In this document: positions 1 through 7,772 of the stretch, piece after piece
How the letters are laid out: each line of letters opens with the position of its first letter
Numbering within the stretch: the stretch's first letter is position 1
Assembly (NCBI GenBank): GCA_001179505.1
Contig: CDMY01000968.1
Location: forward strand, 1 to 7,772
Source: Vitrella brassicaformis CCMP3155
Taxonomy: Eukaryota > Protista > Chromerida
Length of the DNA stretch: 7,772 bases
Direction: 5' to 3'
Program-made: the position numbers and the translations under genes
Notes under the pieces: model-generated
Told to the model about the DNA's origin: nothing
Database searches by the model: none
Seen by the model: the letters and a program-made list of their open reading frames with translations, nothing else

Positions 1-270
1 AACGAGTTCAACGAGCTTTATCAGAAGACGCGCACGCGCAAATCGGAGTCAGAAGCGGTGGAGCTGTTCATTGACGGCCTGCTGCCTGACCTGAGGGACA
101 AGATATATGACAAAGACAGCGACCCCAGCACATTCAGCACCGTCAGAGAACTCGGACTGAGTGCGGAAGTATGGCTTTTGCGGACACGCAAACGCGGCAA
201 CAGCCACAACGAAGAAGACAGCGATGCCGAGAGGACGAGACCGTCAAAAAGCGCACGGATGCAGCCCTGA
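1..270 (+). CDS. gag: Gag, C-terminal part (5'-partial; frame 1 is open from base 1 to TGA at 268-270)
   Basis: Reads NEFNELYQKTRTRKSESEAVELFIDGLLPDLRDKIYDKDSDPSTFSTVRELGLSAE, matching the retrotransposon capsid C-terminal pattern F..GL...++..+....P.T+..+...A...E. Confidence 0.8.
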   Translation, partial: NEFNELYQKTRTRKSESEAVELFIDGLLPDLRDKIYDKDSDPSTFSTVRELGLSAEVWLLRTRKRGNSHNEEDSDAERTRPSKSARMQP

Positions 271-2377
271 ATGTACAGGCACTCGAGAAACAGGGCGATC
301 CCGATTCTGTGGATATTGTCGATACGAGAAGTACCACCAACCTGATACAACCTGACCACCATATCCCGGCGGCTGGGCCAAGGGACCGCCAGAGGGCCGT
401 AGAGCATCTTGGCGATTTGCAGAGTGTAAAAGAGCATCTTGGCGATTGTCAGAGGGCCACAGCGCATCTTGACAATTGTCGGAAAGCCAAAGAGCCTCTT
501 GACAAGAACTTGGTGTCCGGGTCGGAAGGACCTTTGGGTGCATTGGACAAGCGATTGTGCAACCCCCCTAATATGGCACACCCTGATGCATCAGCGGGCG
601 CGGATAGAAGTCAAGGACAGCCAGTTATGGGATACGCGGGTCTCGCGAGTAGGCTCGGAGGTACCGGTGGCGGTGGGCAGCCACTGATGATAACTGGCGA
701 AGGGCAGGAGCTGGACGGGGCTAGTTCCGCCGAAAACCCCGACGGCGGCAAACGAGAAGGAGGGACGCCTTCTTCCTCGGATGTCGTGCATGGCGGTAGG
801 CGAAGAGATGGGACGCCTTCTTCTTCGCATGCCGTCACGTCGCTGGGCCCACCAGTGACGGAGTGGAAAACGGATGGTCATGTTGTACGTCAGGATGTGT
901 ACAACGCAGTATGTAGCGGAGGCAATCAGGCTCCTACAGCTGCATGGAAGGAACGCCACACTGAGATTGTGCGAGGTGTGCGTTGGCAGACATTCGTACC
1001 GATGAGAGTGAATGGGGTCTCATCTGAGGTGCTTGTTGATACTGGGGCTGACGTGAGCTTGATCAGCAAGACAATGCTCGATAAGCTGCGGGCCGAGGGG
1101 ATTAAAGACATAACGCTGACGCCGGCGCGTGTGAAGCTGAGTATGCTGCATCATGCCGAGGCGACAGTGAAGAGCGTCGCAAAGGTTGCACTGTGGCCTG
1201 ATGGAGTCAAGGGAGCAGACACAAGCACGACGTGTTTGCGTCATCTTCTAGTGGAGTTTTGCGTTATTGATGGGCCGAAGAGTGTCATCTTACTTGGGGG
1301 AAAAGCCATTCGTGAGGAAGGCATCATTGTCGACTTCCAAATGGGCAAAGTGCGCATCACATCCCGACCAGAATGGCCACCTATAGACATACAAGAGCCG
1401 CAGATAGGGGAGGCAGATGGTTTTAGCATCACTGCGATTGGCGTAATTCGCTTGAAGCCACGCGCCGGGCACGACAAGACGAGTTGCCAGGTTCTCGTCA
1501 CTGCCAGGACGCCCATACCAGCCGGAAAAGAGACATGGGTGCGAGCGCGAGTGAGTGGAACTGAAGGCGAAGAAGGGGACATCATTCGTTTGATCGATCG
1601 TCCTGCTCTCACGTACCATGGTGGTGCCAGGCTTGCTGTCGCCAACCATATGCTGGAGGTCACGAAGGGTCGTCGTGTGTACGTAAGGCTTCGCAATGAA
1701 TCGCTGAAGAGGGCCGTGCTGCCAAGGAACTACCTGCTGGGGTATTTCGTCACATTGCCGAGCCTGGATGATGCGACTTCCCTAATGCAGACATCTGACA
1801 CAGCCAAACATCAAATAGCAGCACTAGGAATGGTTGACGACGACCTGCCAATGGCGATTGATACGATACCTGCTGAGATTGATCGAGAGCGCCTTGATCA
1901 CTTGATGGGGACTGCACCAGAGACAGAAGACGTCTGCAATTACCCAAATGCGAACGGCATCGAGCACAGCATTCATGTCGGCAAGGGCCTGACCGAGCAA
2001 CAGAAGAGACGGGCGATCGATATCATTCGAGAGACACAACAAACAGGGATTTTCTCAAAGGACAGCACTGACCTCGGTCATGTCGATCCGTCGTTGGGTG
2101 TGCATCGAATCTCTGTTAGCGGCAATCCGCCTTACATGAAACCACGGAAGCTGGCGCAGACGGAGTATGAGCAAGCCGTGAAGATAGTGAGTGACCTGGA
2201 GGCCAAAGGCATTGTCGAGCCTGCGGATTCCGAATACAATGCTGCGATTGTGATGGTCAAGAAGAAGGACGGCACTTGGCGTTTGTGTGTGGATTACCGA
2301 TGGCTGAACGAGATCACTGAGAAGTCCCGCTATGCTCCACCATTAATCGATCGATGTTTTGAATGCCTCCAAGGCAT
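171..2377 (+). CDS. pol: Pol segment 1: N-terminal spacer, aspartic protease, dUTPase-like domain, RT N-terminus. Frame 3 is open from 111, so the ATG at 171 may not be the real start
   Basis: Stop-free frame 3 from 111 to the first gap, containing VLVDTGADVSLIS and GIVEPADSEYNAAIVMVKKKDGTWRLCVDYRWLN. Confidence 0.93.
391..510 (+). repeat. Four imperfect 30-bp tandem repeats encoding a 10-aa repeat (RAVEHLGDLQ / SVKEHLGDCQ / RATAHLDNCR / KAKEPLDKNL)
   Basis: Units at 391, 421, 451 and 481 share the core agagcatcttggcgatt / agcgcatcttgacaatt / agagcctcttgacaa. Confidence 0.9.
744..839 (+). repeat. Two 48-bp tandem copies (GGKREGGTPSSSDVVH / GGRRRDGTPSSSHAVT)
   Basis: gggacgccttcttc occurs at 762 and 810; flanking similarity keeps the 48-nt period. 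Confidence 0.85.
987..1358 (+). other. Retropepsin-type aspartic protease domain
   Basis: MRVNG...VLVDTGADVSLIS with catalytic Asp codon at 1038-1040; C-terminal ILLGGKAIREEGIIVDF corresponds to the ILGxDFL motif. Confidence 0.9.
1485..1757 (+). other. Degenerate trimeric-dUTPase-like fold between protease and RT
   Basis: By-eye alignment to dUTPase consensus: IPAGKETWV~IPPGETVLV; IRLIDRPAL~GRIAPRSGL; VANHMLEVTKGRRVYVRLRN~VLNGVIDSDYRGEIKVLLFN; LPRNYLLGYFV~IEPGDRIAQLV. Catalytic motifs are not conserved. Confidence 0.55.
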
Positions 2378-2952
2378 NNNNNNNNNNNNNNNNNNNNNNN
2401 NNNNNNNNNNNNNNNNNNNNNNNNNNNNNNNNNNNNNNNNNNNNNNNNNNNNNNNNNNNNNNNNNNNNNNNNNNNNNNNNNNNNNNNNNNNNNNNNNNNN
2501 NNNNNNNNNNNNNNNNNNNNNNNNNNNNNNNNNNNNNNNNNNNNNNNNNNNNNNNNNNNNNNNNNNNNNNNNNNNNNNNNNNNNNNNNNNNNNNNNNNNN
2601 NNNNNNNNNNNNNNNNNNNNNNNNNNNNNNNNNNNNNNNNNNNNNNNNNNNNNNNNNNNNNNNNNNNNNNNNNNNNNGCTTCCTCGTCTCTGAGCACGGG
2701 CTGCAAGTTGATCCGAAGAAGATTGAAAAGATGGTCCACATGGCTGAGCCGACAGACAAGAAGGAAGTGAGGAGCATCCTAGGTGTCTTCCAGTTCTACA
2801 AACGATTTGTAGATGGCTATGCCGACTTGGCGAGGCCGCTTACTGACCTGACAAAGAAGAGCAACCCATTCGTGTGGGGAGAAAGAGAGAGGCGGGCATT
2901 CCAGTCACTGAAGGACAAGATGATTCAGGCACCTGTGTTGGCCTTGCCTGAT
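2208..2952 (+). other. Reverse transcriptase (core interrupted by N gap; the YxDD motif is hidden in the gap)
   Basis: Before gap: IVMVKKKDGTWRLCVDYRWLN and PPLIDRCFECLQG. After gap: FLVSEHGLQVDPKKIE, EVRSILGVFQFYKRFV, FVWGERERRAFQSLK...APVLALPD (thumb/connection). Confidence 0.92.
2378..2677. other. 300-N gap (placeholder)
   Basis: Exactly 300 N. Frame continuity needs a length of 2 mod 3, and a typical Gypsy RT needs roughly 115 codons here. Confidence 0.95.
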
Positions 2953-4518
2953 TTCAAGAAGCCATTCATTCTCAAGACGGACGCGAGCGGCTATGCGGTT
3001 GGCGCGATTCTCTGTCAGCGAGACTGCAACGGCAAGGAGAGACCGATCCACTATGCAAGTGCGATTCTCGGTGTCTCTGGGCGAAAGTGGTCAGCAACAG
3101 AAAGGGAGGCGCACGCCATCTACTATGCCGTTCGTCATTTCCGTCCGTACCTGTTCGGGCATCGATTTGAGCTGGTTTCGGATCATCAAGCATTGAGAGC
3201 GCTGCGATTCGCAGAGGAGGGCAACCGGAAGCTACAACGATGGTCGCTGATGTTGCAGGACTACGATTTTATCTTCCGTCATCGACCTGGGAAGGAGCAC
3301 ACAGACGTTGACGCGCTCTCGAGACCTCCTGGACAAGAAAACATGGGAGACATCCCTGCTTCGGTCGATGTGCATGAGTATCAACTCGGGGCAATTGACC
3401 TTGAGGCCATGGAGGATAGCCACTTGTTCCATCTTGACCAGACCATGGAGGCCCAGGACCAGTGTGCTGACGTCTCACGCGTGAAGGCGTACCTGGAGGC
3501 CAAGGACAACAACACAAGCAAAGGAGAGCTCGATCAGCTGCGTGACACCATTCCGAAATCATATTGGTCGAAGTTTGACGATGCTTGCCTACTGGATAGG
3601 CTGGTGAGAGTCGTGTCGAAGCACCAAGAGCATGGACCTGTGTTGCTGGTGCCCACGTCGCTGCGATTAGAGGCCATGAAGCTGCACCATCAACACCTCT
3701 TGGCTGGCCATCTGGCAATTGAGAGGGCTTACAAGCGCATGGCGCGAGAGTTCTACTGGCCAGGGATGTATGGCGACCTTCGCAAGCATATCGACGCTTG
3801 TCCAGCTTGCGAGAGCAAACGAAACCTGAGGACAAACAAGAGAGCGAGCATACAGATACCGCCAGTTGAGAGACCATTCCAGAGGGTGGCCATGGACTTC
3901 ATCGGTCCGTTTCAACCTTCAGAAGATGGCAATCAGTGGGCGCTTACCATCCAGGATGACTTCACGAAATTGCCAGAGGTTGAGTCTTTCCGCAGTGCAC
4001 CGACCGGTGAAGACACGGTTAAGGCAATCATCAGGGTCATCGCGAGACACGGAGTTCCGGAAGAGATCATCACCGACAATGGGAGCCACTTCGTCAACCA
4101 ATTGATGCATAAGGTGACGACCAGGCTGCGGATCAAACATACTCGGGCTTCACCGCTGCATCCACAAGGCAATGGGATGATTGAGCGTTTCAATCGCTCT
4201 CTGAAGGATGGCATTCGTCCGTACTTGGACAAGAAGCAGACGAACTGGGACAGGGCCATCCAGGTCTTCCTCTATGCGTACCGCACAACGGAGCACCAAT
4301 CCACCGGATTCACGCCTTTCAAAATGCTGACAGGGCGAGAGGCAGTCCATCCCGGCAGCACTGTGCGGCTCGTTGCCCTTAACGAGTCGGCAGGGAAGGA
4401 CATTGACCTGCAAGATGCCACCAAGCTGATAGTCGAGGGCATCCAAGCCATTCATGAGAAGGCCCGCGTGAACATGGATAGAGCCAAACAGCGAGTAGCT
4501 GCTCGTGAGAGGGATCTT
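2680..4518 (+). CDS. pol: Pol segment 2: RT thumb/connection, RNase H, integrase zinc finger and catalytic core
   Basis: Stop-free frame 1 across the whole block between gaps 1 and 2, with canonical Gypsy motifs. Confidence 0.95.
2953..3324 (+). other. Ty3/Gypsy RNase H domain
   Basis: FILKTDASGYAVGAIL (D at 2980), SATEREAHAI, LVSDHQAL (D at 3181), HTDVDALSR (D at 3310); all four acidic catalytic positions are present. Confidence 0.95.
3685..4518 (+). other. Integrase: HHCC zinc finger plus DDE core
   Basis: HHQHLLAGH...YWPGM...CPAC; RVAMDFIGP (D 3895), IITDNGSHF (D 4075), GNGMIERFN (E 4183). D-to-E spacing is 35 residues. Confidence 0.96.
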
Positions 4519-4818
4519 NNNNNNNNNNNNNNNNNNNNNNNNNNNNNNNNNNNNNNNNNNNNNNNNNNNNNNNNNNNNNNNNNNNNNNNNNNNNNNNNNN
4601 NNNNNNNNNNNNNNNNNNNNNNNNNNNNNNNNNNNNNNNNNNNNNNNNNNNNNNNNNNNNNNNNNNNNNNNNNNNNNNNNNNNNNNNNNNNNNNNNNNNN
4701 NNNNNNNNNNNNNNNNNNNNNNNNNNNNNNNNNNNNNNNNNNNNNNNNNNNNNNNNNNNNNNNNNNNNNNNNNNNNNNNNNNNNNNNNNNNNNNNNNNNN
4801 NNNNNNNNNNNNNNNNNN
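4519..4818. other. 300-N gap (placeholder)
   Basis: Exactly 300 N. Frame continuity needs a length of 1 mod 3. Confidence 0.95.
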
Positions 4819-4820
4819 AC

Positions 4821-5681
4821 AACCAGGTGCCCAGGGGCCTCAGTAAGAAAGCCATCTCACCTTGGCGGACAGTCGGCATCGTCGAGAAGAAGACGGGACC
4901 CGTCACATACAAGGTCCGTGTGTGCGGCGACCAGACGGCGAAAACCATCAATGTTGATCGACTGAAGGCATCCACACCGCCGTTGGGCGAATGCATCCAC
5001 GATGGAGCCTTTGAGGTGCCAGAAAGCCACCTGACGAGGGACAGGAGACAGACGGTATTCAATCAGGACGCATTCTTGTCGCCTGAACAAGAGGATACCT
5101 TGAAAGGCTTCGGGCTTGGAGAAGACCACATGCCGACACAGACGAGAGCATCATCAGTTGGAGCTGCGTTGGACCCGATGATGAATGATCCGCGTCTCAG
5201 GGACGTCGAGCCGGATGCACGATTTGAGAAGGGTGTTGAGCACGAAGTGGAAGCCATCGTTGGGAAGAGGATCCACAAGGGGCGTGTCCAATGCAAATGC
5301 AAATGGCGCTGGCATCCACTCTCGAGCGCGTCATGGGAGGACGAGAGCGACGTGCTCTGCAAACAACTTGTGCAGGACTACGAGAACCGTGACGTTGGCT
5401 CTGACCTGCGTTTCGATGATACGCCATTCCCGCCGTTGTACGCCATTGTGCGCGTGAGGCACTGCAAGGAGCTCAACCGCGAACACACCGTGAAGGTGAC
5501 TAAGCTTGACAAGGATGGCATCCAGCTGCATTACCTGAAGGAGCCGACACGCACAAAGCGGTCAAAGAAGGAGAGCCTCGTGGGCATGAAGAGTGCCATA
5601 TCGCTGGCCGACTTCCTTCGTTTTTACCAATGGGAGCGAGAGAGGGATGAGAACGAGGACGAACAGGGAGTGGAAGGCTGA
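4821..5681 (+). CDS. pol: Pol segment 3: integrase C-terminus with GPY/F-like module, linker, chromodomain and C-terminal extension; stop TGA at 5679-5681
   Basis: PRGLSKKAISPWRTVGIVEKKTGPVTYKV...INVDRLK matches the GPY/F (SH3-like) module pattern; the frame is open from the gap to the stop. Confidence 0.9.
   Translation, partial: NQVPRGLSKKAISPWRTVGIVEKKTGPVTYKVRVCGDQTAKTINVDRLKASTPPLGECIHDGAFEVPESHLTRDRRQTVFNQDAFLSPEQEDTLKGFGLGEDHMPTQTRASSVGAALDPMMNDPRLRDVEPDARFEKGVEHEVEAIVGKRIHKGRVQCKCKWRWHPLSSASWEDESDVLCKQLVQDYENRDVGSDLRFDDTPFPPLYAIVRVRHCKELNREHTVKVTKLDKDGIQLHYLKEPTRTKRSKKESLVGMKSAISLADFLRFYQWERERDENEDEQGVEG
5238..5384 (+). other. Chromodomain fused to integrase
   Basis: EHEVEAIVGKRIHKGRVQCKCKWRWHPLSSASWEDESDVLCKQLVQDYE aligns with consensus YEVEKILDKR..KGKVEYLVKWKGY...ENTWEPEENL.C..LI.EFE. 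Confidence 0.88.
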
Positions 5682-6059: not shown

Positions 6060-6072
6060 GAAGGGAGGGAAA
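6060..6072 (+). promoter_or_regulatory. Polypurine tract (plus-strand primer)
   Basis: gaagggagggaaa (13 purines), downstream of the pol stop and immediately followed by TGTTG. Confidence 0.75.
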
Positions 6073-6318
6073 TGTTGCAGGGTGCAAGGAATGACACATC
6101 AATCATGAGTCTGTCATGAGGAAAGTGGTGCCTTGCGTGCATGTTGTGGTGTATATCGCTGCGCTGATGAAGGGAGGGAAGATCCCTCATCGCCGGTGAT
6201 TCGTCACTCCATCAGCGCACGAGCACTTTTTGGGTTACTGTCTGGGGGTGCACTGTCTGCCTTCACTCCTCTGGGTCTGTATGATTCGTGTATGTGTATG
6301 TGCTCATGTATATGAATG
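6073..6318 (+). repeat. Probable 3' LTR, 5' part (U3); end not visible
   Basis: Starts with TG directly after the PPT. No second LTR copy is in the window to confirm it, and no clear CAACA terminus appears after the gap. Confidence 0.62.
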
Positions 6319-6618
6319 NNNNNNNNNNNNNNNNNNNNNNNNNNNNNNNNNNNNNNNNNNNNNNNNNNNNNNNNNNNNNNNNNNNNNNNNNNNNNNNNNN
6401 NNNNNNNNNNNNNNNNNNNNNNNNNNNNNNNNNNNNNNNNNNNNNNNNNNNNNNNNNNNNNNNNNNNNNNNNNNNNNNNNNNNNNNNNNNNNNNNNNNNN
6501 NNNNNNNNNNNNNNNNNNNNNNNNNNNNNNNNNNNNNNNNNNNNNNNNNNNNNNNNNNNNNNNNNNNNNNNNNNNNNNNNNNNNNNNNNNNNNNNNNNNN
6601 NNNNNNNNNNNNNNNNNN
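6319..6618. other. 300-N gap, probably covering part or all of the remaining 3' LTR
   Basis: Exactly 300 N, 246 nt after the putative LTR start. Confidence 0.9.
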
Positions 6619-6621
6619 CAG

Positions 6622-6660
6622 GAGAGACCGTTGAAGACAGCCCAGCGGCAACGGTCTCTC
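6622..6660. repeat. Perfect 12-bp inverted repeat with 15-nt spacer
   Basis: gagagaccgttg (6622-6633) and caacggtctctc (6649-6660) are exact reverse complements. Confidence 0.9.
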
Positions 6661-6871
6661 GGTCTTTTTCTTGCGCTTGCGCCTTCCTTATTCCGACTGG
6701 TTGACCTTTGTGCGTTGCTTCGTTTCCCCGTTTCATGCTTGGTTGAGCATCGGACAGTCCTTTCTATTATCGGTGTATGTTTACGGACGCTCACAGCGAC
6801 TGATATCTTCATCGTCGGTCACTCTCACTCAACCACAGCGAAGATCTTCACCACCAAGCCAATCCGCCTCG

Positions 6872-7772
6872 TCACTTCACACATCCATTCTCCACTAAGA
6901 CCCGCTCGCTGAATAGACACTCGGGAGCTGGAACAGCGAGCACCTCAAACAGCTGGGAGGTAAGGCGGGTGATGATGTGACGCGCCTCGAGGAGGCGAAC
7001 GGCCTGCTCGGTCGCCGTGTCCACGTAGCCGGGGAAGTGTTGCTCCAGCACGCCCATGGCGTCACGGGCCGCTGAGGAAGTTGACGAGTTGAGAACACCA
7101 ATGATCTGAGCGCACAAAAACAGGTGGGGTGCAGGCTTGTTAGGCTTCAACTGCGGTGTGCAGTTGGATCGCCAACCTCTGTGGTAGTGGTGAGGTTGGG
7201 GTCCACTCTCAGAGGACATCTGCGGACATGACAGATGATGGCCTCTGCGGCGAAGGCCACTGCAAACGTAAGTTGCAATAACAGAAGGAGTCCGAAAGCG
7301 CACTCCGTGTGTCATGCACCTGCCGCCCGTAGCCGATTGTTGGATGGCACGGCAACTCCGCCAACTGACTTCTTGCAGAACTGAGCACACACATCCACAC
7401 ACACACGGGTGTTGAGGAACACACCCACCCCATTCTCAGCCCGCGGCCCCACCCTCCATCCCACTCTCCCTTCCTCCCTCTGTGCACCCATCATTACCTG
7501 GGGTGCGTAGAGTTTGTCGAGAGTGGGCCGTAGTTCCTCATACGCAGTGCGGCCTTGTGTGCTGAGCATGCTCTGGGCCACCTGCAAGCGACTGACGAGG
7601 ACGCGCTGCCAGGAGATGAAGCGGATCAGTTTGTCCAGGGCCTGAATCGCAGTTGGCGTGGTTGTGTTGGCTGAGGCCTCAAGGATCTGTATGGCGCCGT
7701 CCAGGTCCATCGAAGGAGAGGGGACCTGAGGCTGCTGGAGGGATCTGCAGGAAGTGGCGATGGCCTTGTTGT
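6872..7772 (-). CDS. Spliced host gene of unknown function, 3' part. Putative exons 7772-7498, 7380-7320, 7259-7177 and 7105-6872
   Basis: GT-AG introns of 117, 60 and 71 nt (CAG|GTAATG...CTCAG, G|GTGCAT...TTTGCAG, GAG|GTTGGC...CTAAC...CTCAG) join into one frame: ...LDKLYAPQ|FCKKSVGG...LRAAV...TTTTE|IIGVLNSS...VENGCVK*. The last exon end is less certain. Confidence 0.68.

What the first reader, a model, noticed from the sequence alone, without database searches (positions are those of the whole stretch)
5385..5681. Extra ~98-aa domain after the chromodomain: possible second Royal-family reader (tandem reader integrase)
Seen: chromovirus Pol normally ends shortly after the chromodomain, but this one continues FPPLYAIVRVRHCKELNREHTVKVTKLDKDGIQLHYLKEPTRTKRSKKESLVGMKSAISLADFLRFYQWERERDENEDEQGVEG*. 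That is alternating hydrophobic strands, a helix, then an acidic tail. The pattern V.VRH...H.VKV.......LHY....KR..E.LV....I resembles Tudor-knot/chromo-barrel domains (V.VHY.GWNKR.DEWV in Esa1/MOF). AIVRVRHCK also echoes AIVGKRIHK of the first chromodomain, hinting at a diverged duplication. Inference: an integrase with two chromatin- or nucleic-acid-reading barrels could represent an undescribed targeting module that compensates for the degenerate cage in the first domain.
Basis: partly seen in the sequence, partly recalled or inferred. Interest (0 to 1): 0.72.

Follow-up and report, generated by a model that had tools for sequence, protein, structure and literature searches.

The report
Orphan barrel domain after integrase chromodomain
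A jumping gene (Ty3/gypsy retrotransposon) of the alga Vitrella brassicaformis has an integrase that does not stop after its histone-reading chromodomain: it carries one more small, strongly conserved, probably barrel-shaped domain found nowhere else, which looks Tudor-like in shape but lacks what a methyl-histone reader needs.

Summary
One open frame (window 4827-5681) runs from the integrase C-terminus through a Pfam chromodomain (5244-5390, E 7.5e-10) into 96 more codons with no family match.

The tail is real protein. It is intact in three other diverged genomic Vitrella copies, with synonymous sites saturated (pS 0.69-0.78) and pN 0.12-0.32. That is as constrained as the chromodomain.

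HMMER against 1.84 billion representative proteins, two metagenome scans and one viral scan found it only in Vitrella.

AlphaFold2 on a 3-sequence alignment (pLDDT 67) gives six strands plus a C-terminal helix. The best structural matches are nearly all Tudor domains, but weak (Z up to 6.2, Foldseek E 0.37), so only a generic small beta-barrel is shown.

The barrel is basic and has one conserved aromatic residue, so there is no aromatic cage. Profile comparison shows no kinship to the element's own chromodomain or integrase SH3 domain.

Verdict: a lineage-restricted accessory domain on a chromodomain integrase, most likely an extra tether (nucleic acid, nucleosome or host protein). It is not a demonstrated second histone-mark reader.

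The scan noted the same architecture earlier on other DNA of this genome (s1-215953).

The parts
1..270 (+). End of the gag reading frame. It runs off the window start and stops at 268-270.
   Evidence: Translation. No Pfam match.
171..2377 (+). Start of pol, in the -1 frame relative to gag: long N-terminal region, aspartic protease (about 996-1118), start of RT. It runs into masked N 2378-2677.
   Evidence: Asp_protease_2, E 8e-6.
2680..4518 (+). pol continued: RNase H (about 2875-3264), integrase H2C2 zinc domain (about 3649-3816), integrase catalytic core (about 3868-4215). It runs into masked N 4519-4818.
   Evidence: RT_RNaseH 1e-34, Integrase_H2C2 9e-17, rve 1e-12. N runs are 300-N placeholders that do not keep length, so frame changes across them are not frameshifts.
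4827..4973 (+). Visible part of the integrase C-terminal SH3-like (GPY/F-type) domain.
   Evidence: Integrase_p58_C, E 6e-4, below cut-off. Alignment with P0002.
4974..5243 (+). Less conserved linker between the integrase SH3-like domain and the chromodomain.
   Evidence: dN 0.28-0.34, the highest of the alignable segments.
5244..5390 (+). HP1-type chromodomain. The cage positions read His / Trp / His in this copy.
   Evidence: PF00385, 39 bits. (profile against Drosophila HP1 1kna, E 5.6e-15, with residue alignment).
5391..5429 (+). Short acidic linker (DVGSDLRFDDTPF).
   Evidence: pLDDT is below 50 for the first residues.
5430..5600 (+). Basic beta-rich core of the extra domain (tail-core residues 10-66). 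Predicted strands are 15-19, 27-35, 40-46, 49-52, 55-58 and 63-66. The invariant motif R-x-R/T-H-x-K-E-L-x-R-E-H-x-V-K-V lies here.
5604..5648 (+). Conserved amphipathic C-terminal helix (SLADFLRFYQWERER).
   Evidence: Predicted as a helix in both AlphaFold2 runs. L, F, L and Q-W-E are invariant in the copies that have this stretch.
5652..5681 (+). Variable acidic end of Pol and the stop codon (5679-5681).
   Evidence: not conserved between copies.
6060..6072 (+). Polypurine tract GAAGGGAGGGAAA.
   Evidence: same motif directly before the 3' LTR of L001.
6073..6951 (+). 3' LTR, starting TGTTGCAGGG. It contains masked N 6319-6618. Its 3' end is not fixed and lies somewhere about 6870-6951.

Best explanation
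Shown: window 5430-5651 encodes a genuine, selectively maintained C-terminal domain of the integrase of a Vitrella-restricted group of chromodomain-bearing Ty3/gypsy elements. It is translated in frame directly after the chromodomain and has no detectable sequence relatives outside Vitrella.

Probable, from a model of modest confidence: it folds as a small SH3/Tudor-like beta-barrel of about 55 residues, followed by an amphipathic helix of about 15 residues and a variable acidic end.

Inferred: it has no aromatic cage. It is basic (barrel pI 9-10.5), and its invariant residues are mostly charged or polar (R17, H20, K22, E23, R26, E27, H28, K31, D36, E47, T49, R50, K52), clustering in the loop between the first two strands. 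I therefore read it as an accessory binding module. On this reading it gives the integrase a second contact with its target beside the chromodomain's contact with methylated H3: with DNA or RNA, the nucleosome surface, or a host chromatin protein. That would strengthen or refine tethering of the pre-integration complex. The partner and the effect on insertion sites are not shown.
For: - One ORF, with a Pfam chromodomain followed by 96 codons.
- Conservation: the tail core is 58-78% identical in L001, L002 and L003. pS is 0.69-0.78 against pN 0.12-0.32, with Fisher p at most 9e-9 in all six pairs. Third codon positions are 43-55% identical against 65-89% at positions 1 and 2. So the constraint is on the protein, not the DNA, and equals that on the chromodomain.
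- L001 has LTRs that are 99-100% identical, so a tail-bearing element inserted recently.
- Fold: AlphaFold2 on the tail alone gives pLDDT 67.4 with six strands and a helix. The main strands and the helix recur in the independent two-domain run.
- Structural matches are dominated by Tudor domains (SETDB1, PHF1/19, LBR, SMN, TDRD3), with SH3, PWWP and KOW barrels further down the list. Z is 5-6.2 with 52-62 residues aligned at 1.7-3.8 A.
- Basic composition and a single conserved aromatic residue.
- Precedent, from established knowledge: integrase C-termini of LTR elements carry the target-tethering modules. Chromodomains direct integration to heterochromatin (Gao et al. 2008, cited in PMC12477816). 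A Tudor-bearing Gypsy element was reported in Ectocarpus (PMC12477816).
Against: - The model rests on 3-4 sequences. In the two-domain run even the bona fide chromodomain got pLDDT of about 25, so AlphaFold2 is barely informed here and the barrel topology is not secure.
- Z of at most 6.2 and Foldseek E of at least 0.37 are within what unrelated small barrels give (notes).
- There is no binding evidence of any kind, and no insertion-site data.
- The basic hairpin TRTKRSKKE could simply be a nuclear-localisation patch, and it is unstructured in the second model.
- All sister copies carry defects elsewhere (L001 two frame changes, L002 one, L003 an internal deletion), so no fully intact tail-bearing element was seen end to end. 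The window copy is open in all visible parts, but 600 nt of pol are masked.
Confidence: 0.5

Rival explanations
1. It is a true second Royal-family reader: a Tudor or chromo-barrel domain that binds a methylated lysine or arginine. That would give the integrase bivalent reading of histone marks.
For: The top structural matches are almost exclusively Tudor domains, many of them methyl-lysine readers. Two invariant histidines (H20, H28) and the conserved Tyr/Phe44 sit in the first loop and the second and third strands, where Tudor cages lie. This is inference only, because no residue-level superposition was available. One Gypsy element with a Tudor domain is published (PMC12477816).
Against: No Pfam Royal-family model matches at E 10 in five tails, and no PDB sequence matches. 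Only one conserved aromatic residue lies in the barrel, whereas canonical cages need three or four. Z of at most 6.2 is in the generic range.
Confidence: 0.12
2. It is a protein-protein module. Either it dimerises, making it a functional analogue of the HP1 chromo shadow domain that follows the HP1 chromodomain, or it docks onto a specific host factor, as the Ty5 targeting domain binds Sir4 and Ty1 integrase binds Pol III subunit AC40.
For: The amphipathic helix with its invariant L/F/L/Q-W-E face is conserved. The order chromodomain-then-second-module mirrors HP1. The invariant charged surface residues fit a specific protein interface as well as they fit nucleic acid. The host-factor examples are from established knowledge.
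Against: Chromo_shadow (PF01393) gives no hit, and chromo shadow structures are not among the listed structural matches. The helix may simply pack on the barrel. No partner is known.
Confidence: 0.25
3. It is an internal duplication of an existing integrase barrel, either the chromodomain or the SH3-like C-terminal domain, diverged beyond easy recognition.
For: All three are small beta-rich modules.
Against: hhalign of tail against chromodomain gives probability 0.4%. hhalign of tail against the integrase SH3-like domain gives probability 0.07%. Only 3-4 residues align in each case.
Confidence: 0.08
4. It is a meaningless read-through or disordered tail of a decaying copy.
For: TE copies decay. 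One transcript-like contig (L004) has a 22-residue deletion in the tail and a broken chromodomain.
Against: Strong purifying selection holds across four genomic copies with saturated synonymous sites. Ordered strands and a helix are predicted twice.
Confidence: 0.03

Closest known systems
Chromodomain-bearing Ty3/gypsy integrases (chromoviruses such as MAGGY, Tf1 and plant Tekay/CRM; Gao et al. 2008)
   Same: The domain order is the same: PR-RT-RNaseH-IN(zinc, core, SH3-like)-chromodomain. The chromodomain is HP1-like (E 5.6e-15 to HP1). The presumed role is tethering integration to chromatin.
   Different: Those Pols end within a few residues of the chromodomain (median 7 in my sample). This one adds a conserved domain of about 75 residues plus an acidic end. 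The first cage residue is His, not Tyr. Placement in the chromovirus clade was not tested.
Gypsy-10_Ec32 of Ectocarpus, a Gypsy element with a C-terminal Tudor domain (PMC12477816)
   Same: A Ty3/gypsy integrase carrying a small-barrel, Tudor-type C-terminal module. [quoted passage not shown]
   Different: There the Tudor domain is recognised as such by the authors and stands in place of a chromodomain. Here the barrel follows a chromodomain, matches no Tudor profile and lacks the aromatic cage.
Tudor domains of SETDB1, PHF1/PHF19/MTF2, LBR, SMN and TDRD3 (PDB 6bhg, 6wat, 2l8d, 4qq6, 5yj8)
   Same: These are the best structural matches of the model: 52-62 residues at 1.7-3.8 A, Z 5.2-6.2. The fold is a five-stranded SH3-like barrel.
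   Different: Sequence identity is 6-18% with no profile match. Their ligand-binding aromatic cage has no counterpart here, and the Vitrella domain carries an extra conserved C-terminal helix.
HP1 architecture (chromodomain, hinge, chromo shadow domain)
   Same: A chromodomain is followed by a second small beta-plus-helix module on the same chain.
   Different: The linker here is about 13 residues rather than a long hinge. There is no Chromo_shadow match by sequence or among the listed fold matches.

Membership tests
Chromodomain-bearing Ty3/gypsy retrotransposon (chromovirus type) | Pol order PR-RT-RNaseH-IN with an H2C2 zinc domain and an rve core | tested here: met
   Pfam hits in that order. 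The RT itself is mostly under the masked N run, but it is present in the sister L001 (RVT_1, 5.6e-32).
Chromodomain-bearing Ty3/gypsy retrotransposon (chromovirus type) | Chromodomain fused to the integrase C-terminus | tested here: met
   PF00385, 39 bits against a cut-off of 25.1. The profile matches HP1 at 5.6e-15.
Chromodomain-bearing Ty3/gypsy retrotransposon (chromovirus type) | Three-residue aromatic cage (HP1 Y24, W45, Y48) of group I chromodomains | tested here: not met
   The alignment to 1kna and to sister copies gives His / Trp / His in the window and His / Trp / Trp-or-Tyr in the sisters.
Chromodomain-bearing Ty3/gypsy retrotransposon (chromovirus type) | Phylogenetic placement of RT/IN inside the chromovirus clade | not tested
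   The nearest RT relatives are 37-48% identical and include chromodomain elements of green algae and plants. No labelled reference tree was built.
LTR retrotransposon | PPT followed by an LTR starting with TG, with the LTR repeated at both ends | tested here: inconclusive
   The PPT and TGTTGCAGGG LTR start are conserved with L001, whose two LTRs were found. The window lacks the 5' LTR.
Tudor / Royal family (Tudor, Tudor-knot or chromo-barrel, PWWP, MBT, Agenet) | Sequence match to a family profile | tested here: not met
   No Pfam family at E 1 or at E 10 in five tails. No PDB sequence at E 10.
Tudor / Royal family (Tudor, Tudor-knot or chromo-barrel, PWWP, MBT, Agenet) | Five-stranded SH3-like barrel fold | tested here: inconclusive
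   Model pLDDT is 67. Best Z is 6.2, to the SETDB1 Tudor domain. Foldseek E is 0.37 with probability 0.93. These values are within the generic range.
Tudor / Royal family (Tudor, Tudor-knot or chromo-barrel, PWWP, MBT, Agenet) | Aromatic cage of three or four residues | tested here: not met
   The barrel part has 1-2 aromatic residues, and only Tyr/Phe44 is conserved.
Tudor / Royal family (Tudor, Tudor-knot or chromo-barrel, PWWP, MBT, Agenet) | Binding of a methylated lysine or arginine peptide | not testable with these tools
   This needs peptide arrays, ITC or NMR.
Second chromodomain (tandem duplication) | Detectable profile similarity to the element's own chromodomain | tested here: not met
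   hhalign probability 0.4%, with 4 columns aligned.
Duplicated integrase SH3-like C-terminal domain | Detectable profile similarity to the element's own GPY/F-type domain | tested here: not met
   hhalign probability 0.07%, with 3 columns aligned.
Chromo shadow domain | Match to PF01393 or to chromo shadow structures | tested here: not met
   No Pfam hit at E 10. None among the 50 best structural rows.

The most novel reading that the evidence does not exclude
The integrase is a true bivalent chromatin reader. The partly degenerate chromodomain and the cage-less Tudor-like barrel together recognise a combinatorial nucleosome feature, for example H3K9me plus DNA, the acidic patch or a second histone tail. 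On this reading the barrel is a previously unknown branch of small-barrel chromatin binders that arose in chromerid retroelements and directs integration in a very gene-dense, TE-poor genome.
Probability: 0.15. Interest if true: 0.7.

Novelty: new variant of a known kind. Interest (0 to 1): 0.45.

Why it matters
Integrase C-terminal modules decide where LTR retroelements land. Each new module has been a handle on host chromatin biology and a possible tool for targeted integration.

Vitrella is a free-living relative of apicomplexan parasites. Its genome is compact and holds only about 1.5 Mb of transposable elements (PMC4501334). An element that keeps two C-terminal modules under selection there hints at a stringent targeting requirement.

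The domain is also an orphan fold candidate: it has no relatives among 1.84 billion representative proteins. A structure and a binding partner would therefore be new information. The practical importance is moderate, because the principle of extra targeting domains on integrases is known.

Tried and rejected
- **Phage tblastn.** This was irrelevant and a wasted call.
- **Word-index search on the tail of the L001 ORF.** It returned only the query's own protein, so it says little.
- **ESM Atlas.** The feature search (scores at most 0.88, phage hypothetical proteins) and the shape search (TM 0.5-0.6 to assorted bacterial DUFs and one Tudor cluster) gave no usable lead.
- **P0007 and P0008 from the big HMMER search.** They looked like distant relatives, with E of 1e-7 and 3e-4. 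Each is a sum of 6-12 repeat stretches of at most 9.6 bits in repetitive surface proteins, so I rejected them as artefacts.
- **Two-domain AlphaFold2 run.** It failed (pLDDT 45) even on the chromodomain. It therefore cannot say whether the two domains pack together.
- **Duplication hypotheses.** Both were rejected by hhalign.
- **NLS idea for TRTKRSKKE.** The basic character is conserved, but the K-K/R-x-K/R pattern is not, so I keep it only as a minor possibility.
- **3' end of the LTR.** It could not be fixed.
- **Masked N runs (2378-2677, 4519-4818, 6319-6618).** I worked beside them and did not try to fill them.

Full report
**What the window is.**
The 7772-nt window holds most of a Ty3/gypsy LTR retrotransposon of Vitrella brassicaformis CCMP3155. 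The closest database proteins are named as Vitrella proteins by NCBI and UniRef.

- A gag frame runs off the left edge and stops at 268-270.
- Pol follows in the -1 frame. It has an aspartic protease, RNase H, an integrase zinc domain, the integrase core, a weak SH3-like C-terminal match and a chromodomain.
- Three runs of exactly 300 N interrupt it. In the sister locus L001 a 440-nt LTR stretch is represented by 300 N. The runs are therefore placeholders that do not keep length, and the frame changes across them are not frameshifts. I worked beside them.
- After the Pol stop (5679-5681) come about 380 nt of untranslated sequence. Then follow a polypurine tract (6060-6072) and an LTR starting TGTTGCAGGG at 6073, the same arrangement as in L001.
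- Pieces of a host gene lie on the minus strand from about 6872.

**The observation.**
It lies directly after a chromodomain that passes Pfam's threshold (nt 5244-5390). A profile of that chromodomain matches Drosophila HP1 at E 5.6e-15.

I tested the premise that chromodomain Pols normally stop there. Among the 120 nearest RT relatives I could place a chromodomain in 11. Eight of them end within 12 residues of it, with a median of 7. None matched a tail HMM even at E 10.

**Is the tail real protein?**
Yes. Four more Vitrella sequences carry it:
- P0002 / L001: an element with LTRs that are 99-100% identical.
- P0003 / L002.
- P0005 / L003: an internally deleted element that keeps gag plus only the linker, chromodomain and tail.
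- P0006 / L004: a short JGI contig, decayed, with a 22-residue deletion in the tail.

The copies are old relative to each other. Proportions of synonymous difference are 0.69-0.78, which is saturated. Non-synonymous proportions in the tail core are 0.12-0.32. pN/pS is 0.18-0.42, with Fisher p between 1e-15 and 9e-9 for all six genomic pairs. Third codon positions are 43-55% identical against 65-89% at positions 1 and 2. The chromodomain shows the same level of constraint, and the linker before it shows less. The acidic end beyond ...QWERERDE is not conserved.

**Relatives elsewhere.**
- No Pfam family matches at E 1, or at E 10 across five tails. No PDB sequence matches at E 10.
- A profile search of 1.84 billion representatives gave five hits. 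Three are the Vitrella proteins. The other two are repetitive surface proteins whose significance is a sum of 6-12 stretches of at most 9.6 bits each, and I reject them.
- Two scans of JGI metagenome contigs and one of viral contigs found nothing.
- Absence from unannotated eukaryotic genomes such as Chromera could not be tested.

**Fold.**
AlphaFold2 on the 83-residue core with three sequences gave mean pLDDT 67.4. It predicts strands at 15-19, 27-35, 40-46, 49-52, 55-58 and 63-66, and a helix at 68-82.

A second run on chromodomain plus tail with four sequences was poor overall (pLDDT 44.8). Even the certain chromodomain scored about 25. Low confidence here therefore reflects the shallow alignment, not disorder. 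Still, the tail reached 50-68 and reproduced strands 1, 2, 3 and 6 and the helix.

- Foldseek against the PDB gave no match at E 0.001. Its best rows (E 0.37-1, probability up to 0.93) are Tudor-SN, Krimper, TDRD1, Agenet and PWWP.
- VIA-align against 48,161 representative chains gave a best Z of 5.9 (SETDB1 Tudor). Next came LBR, SMN and TDRD3 Tudor domains, a designed SH3 and the KIN SH3-like tandem, with PWWP, KOW and the MRG15 chromo-barrel lower in the list.
- The second look at Foldseek's own list gave Z up to 6.2, almost all Tudor domains.

The tool's own calibration says Z under 8 can be just a common arrangement. I conclude 'small SH3/Tudor-like barrel plus helix, probable' and no more.

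**Reader or not.**
A Royal-family methyl reader is defined functionally by its aromatic cage. The barrel part here has one or two aromatic residues, and only Tyr44 (Phe in P0005) is conserved.

What is invariant instead is a set of charged and polar residues: R17, H20, K22, E23, R26, E27, H28, K31, D36, E47, T49, R50 and K52. They are concentrated in and around the loop between strands 1 and 2. The barrel is basic (pI 9-10.5). That pattern fits a specific polar interface with nucleic acid, the nucleosome surface or a protein. It does not fit a hydrophobic methyl-ammonium pocket. The two invariant histidines and Tyr44 may sit where Tudor cages sit. I could not check this, because no residue-level superposition is available.

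**Origin.**
My own alternative, a duplicate of the integrase SH3-like domain, fails too, with probability 0.07%.

**The first chromodomain.**
Alignment to HP1 and to the sisters shows His at the Tyr24 position in all copies and Trp45 kept. The Tyr48 position is His in this copy but Trp or Tyr in the others. 'Degenerate cage' is therefore partly right. Whether the tail compensates for it is untested.

**Mechanism proposed.**
By analogy with the established role of integrase C-terminal modules in tethering, I think the tail most likely gives the integrase a second contact with chromatin or DNA that cooperates with the chromodomain. The analogies are chromodomains and heterochromatin (Gao et al. 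2008, cited in PMC12477816) and, from established knowledge, Ty5-Sir4 and Ty1-AC40.
- Real, conserved domain: about 0.9.
- Barrel-plus-helix fold: about 0.6.
- Nucleic-acid or nucleosome binding: about 0.35-0.4.
- Protein partner or dimerisation: about 0.25.
- Methyl-mark reading: about 0.12.

**Novelty.**
I found no paper that mentions Vitrella, retrotransposon and chromodomain together. The chromerid genome paper treats TEs only in bulk, reporting 1.5 Mb in Vitrella (PMC4501334). A 2025 Ectocarpus study reports, 'to our knowledge', the first TE with a Tudor domain, standing alone rather than behind a chromodomain (PMC12477816). A chromodomain followed by an orphan barrel is thus a new variant of a known principle.

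This scan had already noted the same architecture on another piece of the genome (s1-215953, also s1-227040 and s1-212226). My tests agree with the follow-up of s1-215953.

**Limits.**
The alignment is shallow. The 5' LTR lies outside the window. The 3' LTR end is not fixed.

Noticed in passing
L003:3800-6801: A small non-autonomous LTR element with short terminal direct repeats (3800-3959 and 6641-6801, 86-97% identical). It keeps gag plus only the linker, chromodomain and tail ORF (P0005, L003:5713-6246). Protease, RT, RNase H and the integrase core are deleted. It is annotated as a stand-alone 'Chromo domain-containing protein'.
   Followed up: partly
L001:1515-10485: A sister element with 806-nt LTRs that are 99-100% identical, so it inserted recently. 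Even so, it has two reading-frame changes in the RNase H to integrase-linker region, near L001:7000 and 7330. These could be real mutations or assembly errors.
   Followed up: partly
window 2378-2677, 4519-4818, 6319-6618; L001:10003-10302: The masked runs are always exactly 300 N but replace stretches of other lengths (440 nt in the L001 LTR). Frame shifts across them are therefore artefacts of masking.
   Followed up: yes
window 171-270: The gag frame stops at 268-270 while the pol frame, -1 relative to gag, is already open from 171 or earlier. This is the layout of a -1 frameshift junction. In sister L001, gag and pol are one continuous 1610-codon ORF.
   Followed up: no
window 390-501 and 744-835: Three 30-nt tandem units and two 48-nt units lie inside the long pol N-terminal region. 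They encode repeated peptides such as ..EHLGD.Q.. .
   Followed up: no
window 6872-7710 (minus strand): Two long minus-strand ORFs (6872-7402 and 7312-7710) lie just outside the LTR. They are probably exons of a host gene ending close to the element. No Pfam match.
   Followed up: partly
P0065, P0093, P0106 (environmental relatives): These Gypsy polyproteins from metagenomes list a precomputed Pfam SET-domain entry (PF00856) beside a chromodomain. My Pfam scan of the C-terminal thirds of P0065 and P0093 did not show SET there, so where it lies and whether it is real remain open.
   Followed up: partly
P0120 (environmental relative): Another chromodomain Gypsy Pol with about 137 residues after the chromodomain and no Pfam match in that tail. 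It is unrelated to the Vitrella tail by HMM.
   Followed up: partly
L001:1-917 (minus strand): The host gene next to the L001 element is annotated with OTU and Chromo domains (precomputed Pfam).
   Followed up: no
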